A stretch of DNA of 64,000 bases, from IMG/VR virus record IMGVR_UViG_3300024502_000010, positions 124,001 to 188,000 of that record; one strand, written 5' to 3'. The position numbers were made by a program, and so were the translations under genes. Numbering within the stretch: the first letter of the stretch is position 1; each line of letters opens with the position of its first letter. Positions 3,293-8,992 of this stretch are shown in pieces. The notes under the pieces were generated by a model that had not been told where the DNA came from, did not search any database, and was given only the letters and a program-made list of their open reading frames with translations.

Positions 3293-3523
3293 TTATTTTT
3301 TCCTAATATCAAAATGAAATTCTATAAAGAAATGAAACTCTCTACGGAAGAGAGAAATCATTTTACCAAACTTCACTTGAAAAGTCTTTGGCGTTGATGA
3401 TTTTCTCCTCCTATTGCGTAGTAATAATTCAACACCCCTATTAATTTGAGGTTCTGACTTATTTAGTTTGCTTCTTTCTCCTTCCTGGTCTTTTGTCATG
3501 ATTATATCTCCAGGCATCTTCAA
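3293..3523 (-). CDS. hypothetical protein
   Basis: ORF track; INRGVELLLR motif. Confidence 0.65.
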   Translation of the reverse strand: MKMPGDIIMTKDQEGERSKLNKSEPQINRGVELLLRNRRRKSSTPKTFQVKFGKMISLFRREFHFFIEFHFDIRKK

Positions 3524-3863
3524 GAATACCGTAAAGGTAATTTCTTATTTTTCTTGCTTGTGGTTTTGGAATATGTCCATATCCTTCACGAAGTTGTTTA
3601 TGAATCTCATCTGATCCACCCTCAAGATAATCATCCAAATCCATTACAAGATTACTCAGCTCGTGTGCTGTATTACTTTCAATAAATTGTTCAACCTCTA
3701 CTTTTTTAGTTCCACGAACTTTTAGATAATCATAAAAACTCAAAACAAATTGACCATTGAAAGCATAATCAATTGCTTTTTCTACATCGTTACAAACTTC
3801 GTGAATGGTGTTTTCCATTAAACTAGATTTTGCTCCTTTAGATATTGAACAGTATCGGTGCAT
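3459..3863 (-). CDS. hypothetical protein
   Basis: ORF track; true start probably MENTIHEV. Confidence 0.75.
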   Translation of the reverse strand: MHRYCSISKGAKSSLMENTIHEVCNDVEKAIDYAFNGQFVLSFYDYLKVRGTKKVEVEQFIESNTAHELSNLVMDLDDYLEGGSDEIHKQLREGYGHIPKPQARKIRNYLYGILEDAWRYNHDKRPGRRKKQTK

Positions 3864-4054
3864 CCACCAATGTGTTGGTCATTTACAATCACTTGAGGAA
3901 AGGTAGATCCCTCTCCGAATTCTGAATAAAATTCTTCTCTACTAAAATCACTATTCAATTTGTAGACTACATGTTGCAGTTGTGCCAACTCTAGCACCTG
4001 TTGAACTTTTGTGCAATATGGGCAACCATCTTTTGAATAAACTGTGAACTTCAT
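3818..4054 (-). CDS. nrdC: glutaredoxin
   Basis: CPYC active site, TFPQV and IGG motifs; start at MKFTVY. Confidence 0.92.
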   Translation of the reverse strand: MKFTVYSKDGCPYCTKVQQVLELAQLQHVVYKLNSDFSREEFYSEFGEGSTFPQVIVNDQHIGGCTDTVQYLKEQNLV

Positions 4055-4182
4055 TTTTTTCTGCAATTTTGTGGAATATTTATAGAAGATTTATTATAAG
4101 TCTTTACTGGTGGTCTGTAAAGTCCAGGCCATGTATCACGAATAATTTCTGCGAGTTTGTATGGTGTTGTAGAAGTTATCAT
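4051..4182 (-). CDS. 43-aa hypothetical peptide (MITSTTPYKLAEIIRDTWPGLYRPP...)
   Basis: ORF read by hand; ATGA overlaps at both ends. Confidence 0.55.
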   Translation of the reverse strand: MITSTTPYKLAEIIRDTWPGLYRPPVKTYNKSSINIPQNCRKK

Positions 4183-4253
4183 AAGTCCTGCATAACAGAT
4201 AATATAAACATTAGGATTCCAAAAAGTTGGAAGAGAACTAAGATGAGAAGCAT
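4179..4253 (-). CDS. 24-aa hydrophobic micropeptide (MLLILVLFQLFGILMFILSVMQDL)
   Basis: ORF read by hand; coupled to the next ORF. Confidence 0.4.
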   Translation of the reverse strand: MLLILVLFQLFGILMFILSVMQDL

Positions 4254-4807
4254 TTGAGGTTTTCTACTAGGAGTTCTAATTCTTGTAGGGATGCGTCCCA
4301 TTTTAGGGCATTCGCTCTTGAAGATATAACCCAAATATTATCGGGGGTATATCCTTTACCAGGAACCTTTTGATCTAAACTAGGATTTCTTGGATCTCTT
4401 TTATCATTAGTAGATACAAGAGGTATTCCAAGTAAAGGACAAGTTTCTGGAATAATAATATCATCTATAGTTATACTAAATGGAATACCCTTTCTTTTTG
4501 CCCTATGTTGAGCATTATGAAACATACTATATCTTCTATCGTCTTTTTTTAATTCACCTTCTGGTTTCTTTTTAGTTTTATTAAAAGCAATAGTAGTTTC
4601 TCTCCTAACACACCCACAACTAGTAGTTGAACCATTCATAAGACCATATCTCTCGCAAGTTTTTTCTCCACCACATTCACATTTACAAGTTGAATAAACT
4701 CTATTCTTCCCACTCTTAAAGACTACTTCTTCTTTCAGGACAGTAAGTTTTCCAAATTTTTTACCAATCAAAGCACCACAAGGTTTTGATTTATTATTTA
4801 AGGGCAT
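4238..4807 (-). CDS. free-standing HNH-family homing endonuclease
   Basis: N-terminal GKKFGKLTV...CKCECG...TTSCGC module; C-terminal CPLLG..SLDQKVP..GY...NIWVIS.RAN..K nuclease core. Confidence 0.8.
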   Translation of the reverse strand: MPLNNKSKPCGALIGKKFGKLTVLKEEVVFKSGKNRVYSTCKCECGGEKTCERYGLMNGSTTSCGCVRRETTIAFNKTKKKPEGELKKDDRRYSMFHNAQHRAKRKGIPFSITIDDIIIPETCPLLGIPLVSTNDKRDPRNPSLDQKVPGKGYTPDNIWVISSRANALKWDASLQELELLVENLKCFSS

Positions 4808-4900
4808 TATCCTAACTTTGAATATCTATTATTATTTATATTTTATCATACTTTGGGTCTTATGTAAATAAAAAAGACCCCAACAATGAGGTCTTTAAAA

Positions 4901-5962
4901 TCAAAGTGCGTTGCCCCGAGGCAAAACTTCCTCTGGAAAAACAAAATTTTCATGTGGTTGGTCTACGGGAGCCATCCAAGCACGAAGCCCTTCGTTAAGA
5001 AGTATATTCTTCGTGTAGAAAGTTTCGTATTCCGGATTGACGGCTGCTTCAATCTCCTGACTAACAAAGTCGTAAGCACGAAGATTGAGAGCAAGACCGA
5101 TAATCCCGATAGAAGATGTCCAGAGACCCATGACGGGAACAAAGAGCATAAAGAAATGTAACCAACGCTTGTTACTAAAAGCAATTCCAAAGATTTGCGA
5201 CCAGAAACGGTTAGCAGTAACCATTGAATAGGTTTCTTCCTCTTGTGTTGGTTCGAATGCCTTGAATGTATTTGCTTGATCACTATCTTCAAATAGTGTG
5301 TTTTCTACAGTTGCTCCGTGAATAGCACAGAGCAGTGCTCCACCCAGTATACCAGCAACACCCATCATATGAAATGGGTTAAGAGTCCAGTTGTGAAAAC
5401 CCTGAAGGAACAGAAGGAACCTGAAGATAGCAGCAACACCAAAGGAAGGTGCAAAGAACCAACTGGATTGACCCAGAGGGTACATCAGGAAGACGCTCAC
5501 AAACACTGCGATGGGACCAGAGAATGCAATTGCGTTGTAAGGACGGATGCCTACCAGTCGTGAGATCTCAAACTGGCGAAGCATAAATCCGATCAGACTA
5601 AAGGCCCCGTGGAGCGCCACAAAAGTCCATAGTCCCCCAAGTTGGAACCACCTGACGATATCCCCTTGAGCCTCAGGACCCCAGAGCAGAAGAAGAGAAT
5701 GACCCATAGAATCTGCTGGAGTACTAACTGCTGCAGTAAGAAAGTTTGCACCCTCAAGATAGGAACTCGCAAGCCCGTGAGTATACCAACTCGTGACGAA
5801 AGTTGTCCCAGTAATCCAACCACCAAGAGCAAGATAAGCAGTGGGAAAAAGAAGAAGTCCAGACCAGCCAACAAAAACGAAACGGTCTCTTTTAAGCCAG
5901 TCATCGAGTACATCAAACCATCCTCGTTGTTGAATAGGTTGTGAAAGTGTAGAAGAAGTCAT
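4901..5962 (-). CDS. psbD: photosystem II D2 protein
   Basis: Near-identical to D2 ([14 protein letters not shown]...[10 protein letters not shown]); no intron. Confidence 0.99.
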
Positions 5963-5983
5963 AACCTCCTTAGTTATTTCTCA

Positions 5984-6017
5984 TATTTATCTTAACATTC
6001 CTTAACAAAGTAGTCAA
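5984..6017 (-). promoter_or_regulatory. psbD promoter (sigma70 plus T4-late box) with 10-bp direct repeats
   Basis: TTGACT-N17-TAAGAT; TAAATA; CTTAACATTC/CTTAACAAAG repeat between -35 and -10. Confidence 0.55.
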
Positions 6018-6030
6018 TGAGTGTTTGTGC

Positions 6031-6153
6031 TTATCCCCAATACATCTGACCGAGAGTGAATAAGACAAATACAAGAACTGTAAATACCATCATACCTACA
6101 CCTGCCCAGATGATCCAGGGTTCCATAGGATGATGTTGATTATTATGAGACAT
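6031..6153 (-). CDS. 40-aa single-pass membrane peptide (MSHNNQHHPMEPWIIWAGVGMMVFTVLVFVLFTLGQMYWG)
   Basis: ORF read by hand; clean TM helix; directly upstream of the psbD promoter. Confidence 0.6.
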   Translation of the reverse strand: MSHNNQHHPMEPWIIWAGVGMMVFTVLVFVLFTLGQMYWG

Positions 6154-6179
6154 AAAAAAAGAGGGTTGTTACACCCTCT
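6154..6179 (-). terminator. Rho-independent terminator
   Basis: AGAGGGT-GTAACA-ACCCTCT followed by T7. Confidence 0.8.
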
Positions 6180-6201
6180 AATTATATCAGTTATTCAGTT
6201 G

Positions 6202-6246
6202 TTATCAACCAATTGAAGGTGCAGTGAGAGCAACAGGAGTTGCTTC
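6202..6246 (-). pseudogene. psbA: orphan 3' end of a second psbA allele
   Basis: GAA GCA ACT CCT GTT GCT CTC ACT GCA CCT TCA ATT GGT TGA TAA = [13 protein letters not shown], matching the D1 C-terminus. Confidence 0.85.
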
Positions 6247-6276
6247 AGAAAACTGAGGATAGGTTTTTATTATTAC

Positions 6277-6304
6277 TTGACTTTTTGATAATTTATGATA
6301 TAGT
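6277..6304 (+). promoter_or_regulatory. sigma70 promoter with extended -10
   Basis: TTGACT-N16-(TGa)TATAGT. Confidence 0.6.
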
Positions 6305-6346
6305 TTCTTAGTGGAAACACACATCACACACATTAGGAGAATATCT

Positions 6347-6550
6347 ATGACACCTTATGAACTTCGATTTGAAATCTTTAAGCAAGCATATAATATGCTT
6401 AATGACCAGTTTAGCATGGAATATGATACTGCTGTTCGTTGGAATGAAGATGAGAACAAAAAAGTAGCAATGGATTATCCAGAGTTTCCAACACTTAATC
6501 AAGTTCTAGAACAAGCAGAAATCATTAATGATTTTGTAAGTTCCAAATAA
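6347..6550 (+). CDS. 67-aa hypothetical protein (MTPYELRFEIFKQAY...)
   Basis: Own promoter, SD AGGAGA and a downstream terminator. Confidence 0.8.
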   Translation: MTPYELRFEIFKQAYNMLNDQFSMEYDTAVRWNEDENKKVAMDYPEFPTLNQVLEQAEIINDFVSSK

Positions 6551-6554
6551 AGTT

Positions 6555-6582
6555 AAAGGAGGGTTTTATCCCTCCTTTTTTA
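6555..6582. terminator. bidirectional terminator
   Basis: AAAGGAGGG-TTTTAT-CCCTCCTTT followed by a T-run, between convergent genes. Confidence 0.8.
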
Positions 6583-7317
6583 TTATCTTTTGTTTCTATT
6601 ATAAGTTGCTCTTACAGCATCAAAAGATACTCTATCCTTTTCCTTTTCATCATCGGGAAGATTTGAATATGATGTATTAGCAAGTTTTGCTCTTCTTTGT
6701 TTCTTTTCTGGTGTTTGGTCTGTACTTGTTTTAGCAGTTCTTGCCCAACCCTGATGAACTGCATCAGCACCTGCTTCTCTTGAAGTTCCACTACCACTTC
6801 TTTCACCTCTTCTAATAGCACGAAGGGCAGCGGCAGCAGATGAACGATTTGCTGCTCTACCGAAAGAACGCTTATCACCAGATGCTCTACCATATCCATA
6901 TCTTTTATCTAATGCAGCATCAGATGCTTTCTCATAAGGACTATCCTCTCTTTCTATAATATTGTCTCTCCACTCTTCACTCATATTCACCATAATTGCT
7001 TCTGCTGCTTGTTGAGTATCAGCATATCCTTCATCAAGTAAGTGTGAAAGAATTAGATCGTAAACATCTACTTCTTCTTTTGCTAAATCAGAATCGACAC
7101 GAACATTTGAACCTGTTCTTACATTTCTTCTTGCTGCTGCCTGATGAGCGCGGCGTCTTGCCATCCAAGCACCACTTATACCACCACTATCTACATCTTG
7201 TGCATCTCTCTTTCTTAACATTCCTTTGACTTTTCTATCAGAGATTTCATCCAGTTGCTGATTTTCAACAACTTCCATATATGCTTCTTGAAGATTGCGA
7301 AGTTCTTGTGCGTCCAT
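6583..7317 (-). CDS. late modular hypothetical protein (cyanophage LLDEGYA-module family)
   Basis: Late box CTAAATA upstream; module YDLILSHLLDEGYADTQQAAEAIMVNMSEEWR shared with the 63027 ORF. Confidence 0.8.
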   Translation of the reverse strand: MDAQELRNLQEAYMEVVENQQLDEISDRKVKGMLRKRDAQDVDSGGISGAWMARRRAHQAAARRNVRTGSNVRVDSDLAKEEVDVYDLILSHLLDEGYADTQQAAEAIMVNMSEEWRDNIIEREDSPYEKASDAALDKRYGYGRASGDKRSFGRAANRSSAAAALRAIRRGERSGSGTSREAGADAVHQGWARTAKTSTDQTPEKKQRRAKLANTSYSNLPDDEKEKDRVSFDAVRATYNRNKR

Positions 7318-7332
7318 TTTTATGAATACTTT

Positions 7333-7695
7333 TTAGTTATTTAGGTATTCTATCATCTTTTGAAGAGTGCTGATGTTGTCTCCTACAAGACCTAATGCAG
7401 TGTTGCAGTTGTTACAGAGAACACCACGAACCTTATTTGTAGAGTGGCAGTGGTCTATACACTTCTTGGTTAGTTCCACATCACATATTTGGCAGTTCTC
7501 ATTCTTCATTAGGTCATTATATTGGTCTTCTGTAAGTTTAAATCTGCGTCTAGCATATTCGTGAGTCTTATAATATTGCCTACGAACTTCCCGTTCACAA
7601 TCCTTACACTTTGATTGAACCCCAGAAGGTCTACTACTTCTTTTAGAGAAACTATCAAGTTCTTTTGTTTCTCCACATCTACTACAAGTTTTCAT
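7333..7695 (-). CDS. endonuclease VII-family homing endonuclease (F-CphI-like)
   Basis: CQIC...IDHCH..NKVRGVLCNNCNTALG Endo VII motif; N-terminal CxxC/CxxC; position downstream of psbA; start ATG at 7695. Confidence 0.88.
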   Translation of the reverse strand: MKTCSRCGETKELDSFSKRSSRPSGVQSKCKDCEREVRRQYYKTHEYARRRFKLTEDQYNDLMKNENCQICDVELTKKCIDHCHSTNKVRGVLCNNCNTALGLVGDNISTLQKMIEYLNN

Positions 7696-7740
7696 TATGG
7701 TATGGAAGTTTGGTATGGAACTATTTATGAATAATACCAT

Positions 7741-7768
7741 AAAAAAAGAGACCTGTAAAGGTCTCTTC
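7741..7768 (-). terminator. psbA terminator
   Basis: AAGAGACC-TTTACA-GGTCTCTT followed by a T-run. Confidence 0.8.
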
Positions 7769-7792
7769 ATTCTTATTCAGTTTTTATAAAAC

Positions 7793-8872
7793 TCAACCGA
7801 TTGCGGGTGCAGTAAGGGCAACAGGAGTGTTGCTAGCAGCAGCAAGATCCAGAGGGAAATTGTGTGCATTCCTTTCGTGCATCACCTCGAGCCCGAGTCC
7901 AGCACGGTTCAGAACATCTGCCCAAGTGTTGAGGACACGACCCTGTGAATCAATGATGGACTGGTTAAAGTTGAAACCGTTGAGGTTGAATGCCATGGTG
8001 CTAACACCAAGAGCAGTGAACCAGATACCAACTACAGGCCATGCAGCAAGGAAGAAGTGCAGCGAACGTGAGTTATTAAAGGAAGCATATTGGAAAATAA
8101 GGCGTCCGAAATAACCGTGAGCAGCAACGATGTTATAGGTCTCTTCTTCTTGACCAAACTTGTAACCATAGTTCTGTGACTCGTTCTCAGTGGTTTCACG
8201 AACCAGTGAGGAAGTAACCAGAGAACCGTGCATAGCACTGAACAGAGAACCTCCAAAGACACCAGCCACACCAAGCATGTGGAAGGGGTGCATCAGGATG
8301 TTGTGCTCTGCCTGGAACACAAGCATATAGTTGAACGTACCAGAGATACCCAGAGGCATCGCATCAGAGAAAGAACCTTGACCGAAAGGATACACCAGGA
8401 ACACAGCAGAAGCAGCAGCCACAGGTGCAGAGTAAGCAACACAGATCCAAGGACGCATACCAAGACGGTATGAAAGTTCCCATTCACGACCCATGTAAGC
8501 GTAGATACCGATAAGGAAGTGGAACACTACAAGTTGGAAAGGACCACCGTTGTAAAGCCACTCATCAAGCGAAGCAGCTTCCCAGATGGGATAAAAGTGC
8601 AGTCCAATCGCGTTGGACGAAGGAATAACAGCACCAGAGATGATGTTGTTTCCGTACATGAGTGAACCAGCAACGGGTTCACGGATACCATCAATGTCCA
8701 CTGGGGGAGCACCGATGAATGCGATGATGAAACAAGTCGTAGCAGCAAGCAGGCAAGGAATCATGAGGACTCCGAACCAACCGACATAAAGACGATTATC
8801 GGTTGATGTGACCCAGTTGCAGAATTGTTCCCAAGTATTCGATTGTCGTTGACGTGAAATTGTAGCAGTCAT
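7793..8872 (-). CDS. psbA: photosystem II D1 protein
   Basis: Full D1 sequence; E130; H332/E333 retained; no intron. Confidence 0.99.
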
Positions 8873-8886
8873 TGTTTTAAGCAGTT

Positions 8887-8992
8887 AGTAAGACCATCAG
8901 GGAAATGGTGGAGATACTATGCTCCCCGCACCCTTAGCGGGGATATGAGAGACGTAATTTATACACCCATAGGTCTCGGTTATCGGGTGTCT
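8887..8992 (-). ncRNA. PhotoRC-II-like structured psbA leader
   Basis: GAGAC...GUCUC, CACCC...GGGUG, CCCCGC...GCGGGG and ACCAU...AUGGU pairings in the psbA 5' UTR; family name from recollection, not a search. Confidence 0.6.

What the first reader, a model, noticed from the sequence alone, without database searches (positions are those of the whole stretch)
4901..5050. psbD 3' region carries non-canonical substitutions next to an HNH endonuclease
Seen: [19 protein letters not shown], where D2 proteins normally read SQE(I/L)RAAEDPEFETFYTKN. That is four changes in 8 codons (R304E, E307V, D308N, F311Y in 352-aa numbering; nt 5027-5050), followed by uncommon synonymous codons (CCG, ATA, GGG, CGG GGC). 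The rest of D2 is conventional. Established: free-standing T4-type endonucleases cut a neighbouring gene of endonuclease-less phages, and their own allele is resistant; this acidic lumenal segment lies near E312/K317 on the donor side of PSII. Inference: this is an endonuclease-immunity allele that also changes the charge of a functional PSII surface.
Basis: partly seen in the sequence, partly recalled or inferred. Interest (0 to 1): 0.7.

Follow-up and report, generated by a model that had tools for sequence, protein, structure and literature searches.

The report
Selfish nuclease reshapes phage psbD
A cyanophage copy of the photosystem II gene psbD carries four rare amino-acid changes that occur only where a mobile endonuclease gene sits just downstream. 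This is the pattern expected if the changes protect the phage's own gene from that enzyme, so a selfish DNA element is altering a core photosynthesis protein.

Summary
psbD (4901-5962, minus strand) reads [19 protein letters not shown], with R304E, E307V, D308N and F311Y at nt 5027-5050.

These positions never vary in 64 distinct related phage alleles that lack a downstream endonuclease. R304E was not found in psbD in a collection of 185,579 prokaryote species genomes.

ORF 4238-4807 matches no Pfam HNH model. It does match phage endonuclease families, and its C-terminal domain folds most like the HNH enzyme PacI.

The ORF lies in a 647-bp cassette with a terminator and a TATAAATA late-promoter motif. 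The cassette sits exactly between the psbD stop codon and a conserved 24-aa mini-ORF. Related phages have an empty site there.

Every psbD followed by a close relative of this enzyme (at least 57% identity, over 10 distinct alleles) has changes in codons 305-320. These alleles are scattered over the psbD tree: six independent pairs, all in the same direction.

Amino-acid divergence in the patch is 24-fold higher in endonuclease-linked alleles. Third-codon-position divergence is the same in both groups.

The best reading is a free-standing homing endonuclease whose target is the canonical patch, with the variant as the resistant allele. Cleavage itself is untested.

The parts
4901..5962 (-). 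psbD, photosystem II D2 protein, 353 aa
   Evidence: ORF list and translation. Pfam Photo_RC E 2e-72. 84% nucleotide identity to S-PM2 psbD.
5027..5050 (-). Variant patch: codons E305, V308, N309 and Y312 (R304E, E307V, D308N, F311Y in 352-aa numbering)
   Evidence: Codon table. These positions are invariant in 64 endonuclease-free alleles.
5004..5049 (-). Predicted equivalent of the endonuclease target. These are first and second codon positions that never vary in endonuclease-free alleles but are changed in endonuclease-linked ones. Hot spots are 5028 (codon 312, position 2) and 5014 (codon 317, position 1).
   Evidence: Per-nucleotide comparison of 64 endonuclease-free and 10 endonuclease-linked alleles. 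The role as target is inferred, not shown.
4873..4896 (-). Terminator-like hairpin plus T run directly after the psbD stop codon; left end of the cassette
   Evidence: Terminator scan. An equivalent hairpin is present in most related cassettes.
4833..4868 (-). Promoter region of the endonuclease gene: a sigma-70-like TTTACA-17-TAAAAT (4840-4868) overlapping TATAAATA (4833-4840), the T4-type late-promoter consensus
   Evidence: Promoter scan. TATAAATA is conserved upstream of the endonuclease ORF in 25 of 27 related loci. The reading as a late promoter rests on established T4 biology and is an inference.
4238..4807 (-). Free-standing endonuclease-like ORF, 189 aa. N-terminal small beta-barrel with invariant C43, C45, C64 and C66. 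C-terminal PacI-like beta-beta-alpha domain with S143-L-D145 ... N157 ... R164-A-N166.
   Evidence: phrog_3322 'endonuclease' E 2e-31, phrog_1035 E 4e-18, phrog_374 'HNH' E 1e-15. No Pfam, NCBIfam or PDB sequence match. Model pLDDT 84. PacI 3ldy Z 7.0 and Gme HNH Z 5.2. Family alignment.
4254..4900 (-). Whole mobile cassette of 647 bp: terminator, promoters and endonuclease ORF. It is absent from related phages, which have a 37-bp terminator at this position.
   Evidence: Homology to L044, L117 and L121 runs through psbD to about 4905 and resumes at 4253. Junction sequences.
4179..4253 (-). Conserved 24-aa hydrophobic mini-ORF (MLLILVLFQLFGILMFILSVMQDL). Its start codon marks the right edge of the cassette and overlaps the last codons of the endonuclease ORF.
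   Evidence: Junction comparison with empty-site loci. ORF list.
3818..4066 (-). Glutaredoxin gene. In empty-site relatives it follows psbD directly or after the mini-ORF.
   Evidence: Pfam Glutaredoxin E 1e-13. Synteny in L048, L050, L093 and L119.

Best explanation
ORF 4238-4807 is a free-standing homing endonuclease of an unnamed phage family. The proposed mechanism has three steps.
1. In a mixed infection, the enzyme cuts psbD of phages that lack it, within the canonical sequence coding for D2 residues about 304-319.
2. The break is repaired using the endonuclease-carrying genome as template. This copies the 647-bp cassette and the adjacent psbD 3' end into the recipient.
3. The carrier's own psbD escapes cutting because it differs at first and second codon positions of that site.

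Because those positions are otherwise invariant, escape requires amino-acid changes in D2.

Shown here: the cassette and its empty site; the strict co-occurrence; the scatter over psbD backgrounds; and the localised excess of amino-acid change.

Inferred: nuclease activity, the position of the cut, and resistance of the variant.
For: 1. Mobile cassette. The ORF with its own terminator and promoters lies exactly between the psbD stop codon and the start of a conserved mini-ORF. Relatives L044, L117 and L121 have 37 bp there, and L048, L050 and L119 run straight from psbD to grx. L117 comes from the same metagenome as a copy of this phage.

2. Nuclease-like protein. It matches PHROG endonuclease, endonuclease VII and HNH families. 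Its C-terminal domain superposes best on PacI and an HNH nicking enzyme. All 15 ORFs translated next to psbD are intact, 148-196 aa. There are 443 database relatives.

3. Co-occurrence.
- All 8 full-length distinct alleles with an enzyme of at least 57% identity are non-canonical in codons 305-317, against 2 of 69 others (Fisher p = 2e-9, rows not independent). Two partial alleles are also non-canonical.
- Further alleles from a profile scan and from metagenomes follow the same rule.
- EAAVNPEY itself occurs in five psbD backgrounds, each followed by a family endonuclease.

4. Independence. On a tree of psbD codons 20-295 the linked alleles need at least 6 changes. Six independent pairs all go the same way (sign test p = 0.03).

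5. Localised, non-synonymous excess. Pairwise amino-acid divergence in codons 305-320 is 0.225 in linked alleles and 0.009 in free ones. The gene body shows 0.054 against 0.032. Third positions show 0.54 against 0.49.

6. Every one of the ten close-clade alleles compared at nucleotide level is changed at window position 5028 or 5014. Both bases are invariant in the 64 free alleles.

7. More distant clades of the enzyme go with changes in a different part of the psbD tail, codons 336-348.

8. Precedent. F-CphI, encoded next to psbA in S-PM2, cuts psbA of another cyanophage (PMC6083498). The T4 endonucleases SegF and SegG give localised marker exclusion (cited).
Against: - No cleavage data exist. 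The protein matches no Pfam, NCBIfam or PDB sequence model.
- Position 146, after the conserved S-L-D where an HNH histidine would be expected, is Q or K rather than H.
- The fold matches are only middling, with Z no higher than 7.
- Patch variants with Y312 also occur with no nuclease gene next to psbD (L124/L137, L130, L135, L146, L151) or next to a different, NUMOD3-bearing nuclease (L131 and four others). The link therefore runs strictly from enzyme to variant, not the reverse.
- Some enzymes of about 50% identity sit beside a canonical patch (L165, L167, L168).
- The patch and the cassette lie only 100-150 bp apart. Part of the association could therefore be linkage, and six pairs is a small sample.
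Confidence: 0.7

Rival explanations
1. Hitch-hiking only. The enzyme is a homing endonuclease, but it cuts elsewhere, for example at the psbD stop/terminator junction that the cassette itself disrupts. The patch differences are then passive markers carried along from donor lineages by co-conversion, with no role in resistance.
For: The patch lies only about 100-150 bp from the insertion point. Intron- or insertion-disrupted target sites are the classic route to immunity, as in S-PM2 psbA. In distant clades the gene sits 20-40 bp after the stop codon, and in L097 the ORF ends with a copy of the psbD C-terminus, which points to events at the very 3' end.
Against: Passive markers should resemble sequences found in some endonuclease-free lineage. 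These substitutions are absent from 64 free alleles and from the best 120 database matches. There are more than 10 different patch haplotypes, not one. The excess is confined to first and second codon positions of 16 codons.
Confidence: 0.13
2. Photosystem adaptation. The substitutions tune D2 function, for example the fit to a host PsbO or proton release. They are linked to the endonuclease gene only by chance or shared ancestry.
For: The segment borders the broad proton-exit channel: E310 and E312 lie at its boundary and T316 and N318 along it (preprint 10.1101/2021.01.29.428861). V at 307 and Y at 311 occur in some cellular D2 proteins such as Leptolyngbya. Net charge is kept, which suggests the protein is still under selection.
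Against: The association holds across at least 6 independent psbD backgrounds. The replacements share no chemical direction: Y or W at 311, S or L at 316, S, V or Y at 307. Mutants at E307, D308 and E310 are reported not to alter the FTIR spectra. Endonuclease-free phages from the same kind of samples keep the canonical patch.
Confidence: 0.07
3. Not a nuclease. The ORF encodes a DNA- or RNA-polymerase-binding regulator, and its link to the psbD 3' end has another cause.
For: The canonical HNH histidine is missing. The N-terminal domain resembles Tudor/CarD-type barrels. There is a faint PHROG match to 'decoy of host sigma70' (E 0.09), and one relative is annotated as an Srd anti-sigma factor.
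Against: The strongest profile matches are to endonuclease families, with E values from 2e-31 to 1e-15. The best structural match of the conserved domain is PacI, itself an atypical HNH enzyme. The presence/absence cassette, the polyphyletic spread and the site-specific changes in the neighbouring gene are hallmarks of homing elements.
Confidence: 0.06

Closest known systems
F-CphI (S-PM2 ORF177), the free-standing homing endonuclease next to cyanophage psbA
   Same: It is a stand-alone nuclease gene immediately downstream of a phage photosystem II gene, and its target lies inside that gene in phages lacking the element (PMC6083498). This window also carries an Endonuclease_7-family ORF right after psbA. 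Direct similarity of that ORF to F-CphI was not tested.
   Different: F-CphI uses the Endo VII catalytic motif (PF02945), whereas the psbD-linked protein has no Pfam match and a PacI-like fold. In S-PM2, psbA is interrupted by an intron; my reading that the intron confers immunity comes from memory of Zeng et al. 2009, cited but not read here. Here immunity would come from amino-acid-changing substitutions. The target gene is psbD, which is not mentioned at all in the F-CphI paper, and no paper found in four searches links it to a nuclease.
T4 SegF (gene 56), SegG (gene 32) and MobE (nrdB): intronless homing with localised marker exclusion
   Same: In each case a free-standing endonuclease gene lies between conserved genes and cuts a neighbouring gene of related phages at some distance from its own insertion site. 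Resistance comes from sequence polymorphism, and flanking markers are co-converted (established knowledge; papers cited). The cassette and empty-site structure seen here matches this pattern.
   Different: Those enzymes are GIY-YIG or canonical HNH proteins with demonstrated cleavage. Here activity is inferred. The resistant alleles form a diverse series of non-synonymous variants in an otherwise invariant protein segment.
PacI restriction endonuclease (PDB 3ldy)
   Same: It is the best structural match of the conserved C-terminal domain: model residues 82-171, 90 residues aligned, Z 7.0, Foldseek probability 0.97. Its entry title calls it an HNH restriction endonuclease.
   Different: Sequence identity is only 14%, and no sequence-level match to any PDB chain was found. 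PacI is a restriction enzyme, not a mobile element. The phage protein has an extra N-terminal barrel domain with four invariant cysteines.
Intron-encoded HNH homing endonucleases such as I-HmuI and I-CmoeI (psbA intron of Chlamydomonas moewusii)
   Same: These are phage or organelle nucleases that target conserved coding sequence. There is a weak fold match of the N-terminal part to the psbA intron 1 ORF of C. moewusii (E 0.2, probability 0.80).
   Different: The enzyme here is not intron-encoded, and the match is too weak to count as evidence of kinship.

Membership tests
Free-standing homing endonuclease gene (intronless homing) | Stand-alone nuclease ORF in an intergenic position with its own expression signals | tested here: met
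   The ORF at 4238-4807 is preceded by a terminator hairpin, a sigma-70-like site and TATAAATA. TATAAATA is conserved in 25 of 27 related loci.
Free-standing homing endonuclease gene (intronless homing) | Presence/absence polymorphism at a precise site among otherwise syntenic genomes | tested here: met
   The cassette at 4254-4900 replaces a 37-bp terminator in L044, L117 and L121. In L048, L050 and L119 psbD abuts grx.
Free-standing homing endonuclease gene (intronless homing) | Distribution that does not follow the phylogeny of the flanking gene, indicating mobility | tested here: met
   At least 6 changes are forced by well-supported branches of the psbD body tree.
Free-standing homing endonuclease gene (intronless homing) | Sequence differences in the neighbouring gene that go with the element (candidate resistant site) | tested here: met
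   8 of 8 full-length linked alleles are non-canonical in codons 305-317, against 2 of 69 others. Six of six independent pairs agree.
Free-standing homing endonuclease gene (intronless homing) | Site-specific cleavage of the element-free allele and resistance of the element's own allele | not testable with these tools
   This needs purified protein and DNA substrates. The protein-DNA complex job was not folded and gives no evidence.
HNH / beta-beta-alpha-metal nuclease superfamily | Match to a curated HNH sequence model | tested here: not met
   No Pfam family matched even at E up to 10, and no NCBIfam match was found. Only PHROG families annotated as endonuclease, endonuclease VII or HNH match.
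HNH / beta-beta-alpha-metal nuclease superfamily | Beta-beta-alpha fold of the catalytic domain | tested here: inconclusive
   The model has strands at 142-146 and 158-162 followed by a helix at 163-171. The best matches are PacI at Z 7.0 and Gme HNH at Z 5.2, which is in the range where chance arrangements also fall.
HNH / beta-beta-alpha-metal nuclease superfamily | Catalytic histidine at the end of the first strand, plus conserved Asn and a metal-binding Asn or His in the helix | tested here: not met
   The motif reads S143-L-D145-Q/K ... N157 ... N166. The two Asn residues and D145 are nearly invariant, but no histidine is conserved at the expected place. PacI is likewise atypical (from memory, not tested).
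Photosystem II D2 (PsbD) | Full-length match to the reaction-centre family, with the conserved lumenal residues E312 and K317 retained | tested here: met
   PF00124 E 2e-72. E313 and K318 of this ORF (E312 and K317 in 352-aa numbering) are unchanged. The protein is 98% identical to the nearest endonuclease-free allele.

The most novel reading that the evidence does not exclude
The psbD 3' end of cyanophages is the site of an ongoing arms race between several families of selfish nucleases and their target. At least three clades of this unnamed family take part, along with NUMOD3/GIY-YIG-like and classical HNH genes. The race repeatedly forces new amino acids into the lumenal segment of D2 that lines the proton-exit channel.

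The host's own psbD encodes the same canonical residues, so the enzyme may also cut the host gene. That would promote the host-phage psbD mosaicism reported in the literature and would shift PSII in infected cells towards the phage-encoded, variant D2.
Probability: 0.2. Interest if true: 0.85.

Novelty: new member of a known kind. Interest (0 to 1): 0.66.

Why it matters
Phage photosystem genes are usually discussed as tools that keep host photosynthesis running during infection. Here part of their sequence variation seems to be dictated by a selfish nuclease, not by photosynthesis.

If that is right, three things follow:
- It identifies a large, unannotated endonuclease family (443 database relatives, none carrying a Pfam domain among the 120 listed) with a likely target site.
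- It explains a local hot spot of amino-acid change in one of the most conserved proteins known.
- It gives a mechanism for the mosaic, recombining psbA-psbD region of cyanophages.

It also supplies natural variants of D2 residues 304-319 whose effect on water oxidation can be measured. The cultured phage S-SKS1, which infects Synechococcus WH7803, has the same arrangement, so the idea can be tested directly.

Tried and rejected
- Pfam, NCBIfam and PDB sequence searches with the ORF or its family profile found nothing.
- Fold search against Swiss-Prot models gave only weak, partial matches.
- The protein-DNA complex prediction was not folded and counts as no evidence.
- Laying metagenome and metatranscriptome contigs on 3400-8900 showed that the stretch is present in riverine DNA and RNA libraries. 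The contigs give flat depths and no direction, so transcription of the endonuclease gene is not shown. One low-depth joint that skips 4232-5055 is too weak to use.
- I looked for higher nucleotide identity of the psbD 3' end among endonuclease-linked loci as a sign of a co-conversion tract. None was seen beyond the shared EAAVNPEY codons of the window and L001, which are 23 of 24 nt identical.
A longer pattern was used instead.
- The genome holds no second copy of either endonuclease.
- Four literature searches found no paper that links psbD to a homing endonuclease.

Full report
**What is in the window**

The window belongs to a 204,829-bp T4-like cyanophage genome. That genome was assembled repeatedly from riverine metagenomes.

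Reading the minus strand, the genes run in this order:
- psbA (7793-8872)
- an Endonuclease_7-family ORF (7333-7770)
- three small or unknown ORFs
- psbD (4901-5962)
- a 189-aa ORF (4238-4807)
- a 24-aa hydrophobic mini-ORF (4179-4253)
- glutaredoxin (3818-4066)

**Check of the observation**

psbD encodes a 353-aa D2 protein that contains [19 protein letters not shown]. The four unusual residues are E305, V308, N309 and Y312 at nt 5027-5050. In 352-aa numbering they are R304E, E307V, D308N and F311Y, exactly as reported.

Several comparisons show how unusual they are:
- The 120 best database matches to this C-terminus nearly all read (I/L/V)RA(A/S)EDPEFETFYTKN. A few cellular proteins have K, Q, A or V at 307 and Y at 311. 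None has E at 304 or N at 308.
- A pattern for DFVSQExEAA found no psbD in one genome from each of 185,579 prokaryote species.
- Compared with the consensus of related endonuclease-free phage alleles, this protein has 10 differences. Four of them fall in these 8 codons.

I give them no weight.

**The neighbouring ORF**

The ORF matches no Pfam or NCBIfam model and no PDB sequence. It does match three PHROG families:
- phrog_3322, 'endonuclease', E 2e-31
- phrog_1035, 'endonuclease VII', E 4e-18
- phrog_374, 'HNH endonuclease', E 1e-15

It has 443 relatives in the protein collection. Those that carry a source name are called hypothetical, and none of the 120 listed has a Pfam domain.

A model built from 24 family members has a mean pLDDT of 84. 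Residues 82-171 superpose best on the HNH restriction enzyme PacI (Z 7.0, 90 residues) and next on an HNH nicking enzyme (Z 5.2). Residues 6-62 form a small Tudor/SH3-like barrel.

The alignment shows four invariant cysteines (C43, C45, C64, C66). It also shows a conserved S143-L-D145 ... G152-Y153 ... N157 ... R164-A-N166 motif on a strand-strand-helix unit. No conserved histidine stands where HNH enzymes have their general base.

I therefore call the protein endonuclease-like with a PacI-like beta-beta-alpha domain. I do not call it a confirmed HNH enzyme.

**The ORF is part of a mobile cassette**

Against relatives L044, L117 and L121, homology runs through psbD to the stop codon and resumes at window 4253. 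In those loci a 37-bp terminator hairpin joins the stop codon to the ATG of the mini-ORF.

The window has 647 bp there instead (4254-4900). This stretch holds:
- a hairpin terminator (4873-4896)
- a sigma-70-like site (4840-4868)
- TATAAATA (4833-4840), the T4 late-promoter consensus
- the ORF itself

TATAAATA stands upstream of the homologous ORF in 25 of 27 related loci.

In L048, L050 and L119, psbD is followed directly by grx. L117, an empty-site phage with a canonical psbD, comes from the same metagenome as a copy of the window's phage.

**The co-occurrence test**

I fetched loci in two ways: by the endonuclease and by psbD.

Among the 80 IMG/VR loci with the most similar psbD:
- There are 64 distinct alleles with no family endonuclease downstream.
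- In these, codons 305-317 read RAAEDPEFETFYT in all but one, which has A306T.

Every psbD followed within 65-215 bp by an enzyme at least 57% identical to the window's is non-canonical in this patch. The alleles are:
- EAAVNPEY: the window, L237, L243
- EAAVNPEY plus T316L and I319Q: L001
- RAASDPEY..FYS: L011
- RAAEDPSY: L012
- RAAEDASY: L015
- RAASDSSY: L017
- RAASDPEF..FYS: L020
- RAAEDPEF..FYS: L022, L160
- RAAEDPEW: L025, L026
- RAAYDSEY: L125

The exact variant EAAVNPEY was found only with a family endonuclease downstream, in five psbD backgrounds. In one of them (L242) the enzyme belongs to a different clade.

**Is this more than shared ancestry?**

A tree of psbD codons 20-295, which leaves out the 3' end, scatters the eight full-length linked alleles among the free ones. 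Well-supported branches force at least six changes. Six phylogenetically independent pairs that differ in endonuclease presence all differ in the patch in the same direction (sign test p = 0.03).

The excess is local and non-synonymous:

| Region | Linked alleles | Free alleles |
|---|---|---|
| Amino-acid divergence, codons 305-320 | 0.225 | 0.009 |
| Amino-acid divergence, codons 20-295 | 0.054 | 0.032 |
| Third-position divergence, codons 305-320 | 0.54 | 0.49 |

At the nucleotide level, the bases that never vary in free alleles but are changed in linked ones span window 5004-5049. Each of ten linked alleles is changed at 5028 (second base of codon 312) or at 5014 (first base of codon 317).

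Free alleles differ freely at wobble positions. An enzyme that reads the constrained first and second positions would recognise all of them. Escape from it would then require amino-acid changes. That enzymes tolerate wobble variation in this way is established for other homing endonucleases. Applying it here is inference.

**Wider pattern**

Enzymes of about 50% identity go with a mixture of patch changes and changes at codons 336-344. Enzymes of 40-45% identity sit 20-43 bp after the stop codon and go with changes at codons 336-348. This fits different clades reading different sites.

In L097 the endonuclease ORF ends with a copy of the last ten psbD codons.

Other nucleases use the same spot:
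- A 220-aa NUMOD3-bearing ORF with GIY-YIG-like motifs follows psbD in L131 and four other contigs. Their allele is RAAEDPSY..KNQLLS.
- A classical HNH gene lies further downstream in those contigs.
- L012 also has an HNH/NUMOD3-like ORF (read by eye, not scanned) upstream of psbD, beside a duplicated copy of the first 22 psbD codons.

**Limits**

Alleles with Y at 311 also occur with no nuclease gene beside psbD: L130, L135, L146, L151 and the podovirus-like L124 and L137. This fits loss of the element after a resistant site has spread, but it also weakens the reverse implication.

Three enzymes of about 50% identity stand next to a canonical patch.

No cleavage has been shown. The complex prediction was not run. 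The RNA libraries hold the stretch, but this does not prove transcription.

**Effect on photosystem II**

E312 and K317 are retained. Net charge of the window's patch is unchanged: R to E is -2, E to V is +1 and D to N is +1.

A preprint places E310 and E312 at the boundary of the broad proton channel and T316 and N318 along it. It places D308 on the surface. It reports that mutations of E307, D308 and E310 do not change the FTIR difference spectra (10.1101/2021.01.29.428861).

The window's allele therefore alters positions that appear tolerant. Some sister alleles (E310S, T316S or T316L) touch channel residues. A functional consequence is possible but not shown.

**Comparison with what is known**

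The arrangement works like intronless homing by T4 SegF, SegG and MobE, and like F-CphI next to cyanophage psbA.

It differs from these in three ways: the nuclease family, the target gene, and the diversity of non-synonymous resistant alleles. The F-CphI paper does not mention psbD, and four literature searches found no paper tying psbD to a homing endonuclease.

**Verdict**

The immunity-allele reading is well supported by comparative evidence but not proven. The HNH label and the charge claim need correcting.

I rate this a new member of a known kind, with interest 0.66. The cultured phage S-SKS1 has the same psbD-plus-endonuclease arrangement, with the allele RAAEDGSY, and offers a direct experimental route.

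Noticed in passing
window 7333-8872 (psbA 7793-8872; ORF 7333-7770; codon L328 at 7889-7891): The intron-less psbA is followed 26 bp later by an Endonuclease_7-family ORF (PF02945, E 8e-18), possibly an F-CphI-like gene, though similarity to F-CphI itself was not tested. D1 here reads GLGLEV where most relatives read GLGMEV. The M-to-L change is seen in all five loci whose downstream ORF is 57-100% identical to this one (window, L070, L130, L102, L122). The locus with a 64% relative (L011) keeps M, and two loci with no detected relative also have L (L076, L106). It lies about 6-9 codons upstream of the place where psbA is interrupted in related loci. This could be the same kind of resistant allele in psbA.
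   Followed up: partly
L246 (Synechococcus phage S-SKS1, NC_020851.1, 22787-27764): A cultured phage of Synechococcus WH7803 has both arrangements. One is psbD (annotated 'photosystem II D1', allele RAAEDGSYETFYT) with a family endonuclease 60 bp downstream. The other is psbA followed by an endonuclease VII gene, 85% identical to the window's, and an HNH gene.
   Followed up: partly
L012:1390-2843: A copy of the first 22 psbD codons lies 1.4 kb upstream of the real psbD. A 193-aa ORF with HNH and NUMOD3-like motifs (read by eye) lies between them. This psbD is therefore flanked by nuclease genes on both sides.
   Followed up: partly
L131:5719-6381, and the same ORF in L140, L147, L149, L152: A different nuclease occupies the same site 90 bp after psbD. 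It has NUMOD3 motifs (E 6e-18) and GIY-YIG-like motifs seen by eye. The psbD allele is [19 protein letters not shown], and a classical HNH gene (PF14279) lies further downstream.
   Followed up: partly
L097, ORF starting 20 nt after the psbD stop codon: The endonuclease ORF ends with [10 protein letters not shown], a copy of the psbD C-terminus, and begins with VLPCGNT. Together these look like remnants of a duplicated psbD 3' end flanking the inserted gene.
   Followed up: no
window 4179-4253: A conserved 24-aa hydrophobic mini-ORF (MLLILVLFQLFGILMFILSVMQDL) follows psbD in empty-site relatives. Its start codon is the exact right edge of the cassette. Its function is unknown.
   Followed up: no
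L025, L044, L051, L067, L077, L086, L147 (psbA): In many related loci psbA matches in two to four pieces, with breaks after about codon 226 and codons 333-337. This is consistent with introns like the one in S-PM2 psbA. The window's psbA is uninterrupted.
   Followed up: no
L124 and L137: psbD with Y at 311 (SQELRAAEDPEY in L124; L137 holds only codons 311-353) is followed by a T7-type major capsid gene (PF21703). This suggests a podovirus-like phage that carries psbD, with no nuclease gene nearby.
   Followed up: no
window 3400-8900 in runs X1, X6, X7, X17: The stretch is held almost completely in many riverine DNA libraries and several metatranscriptome libraries from 2018-2019. Lower-depth contigs of a relative diverge near 4232, close to the cassette edge.
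   Followed up: partly
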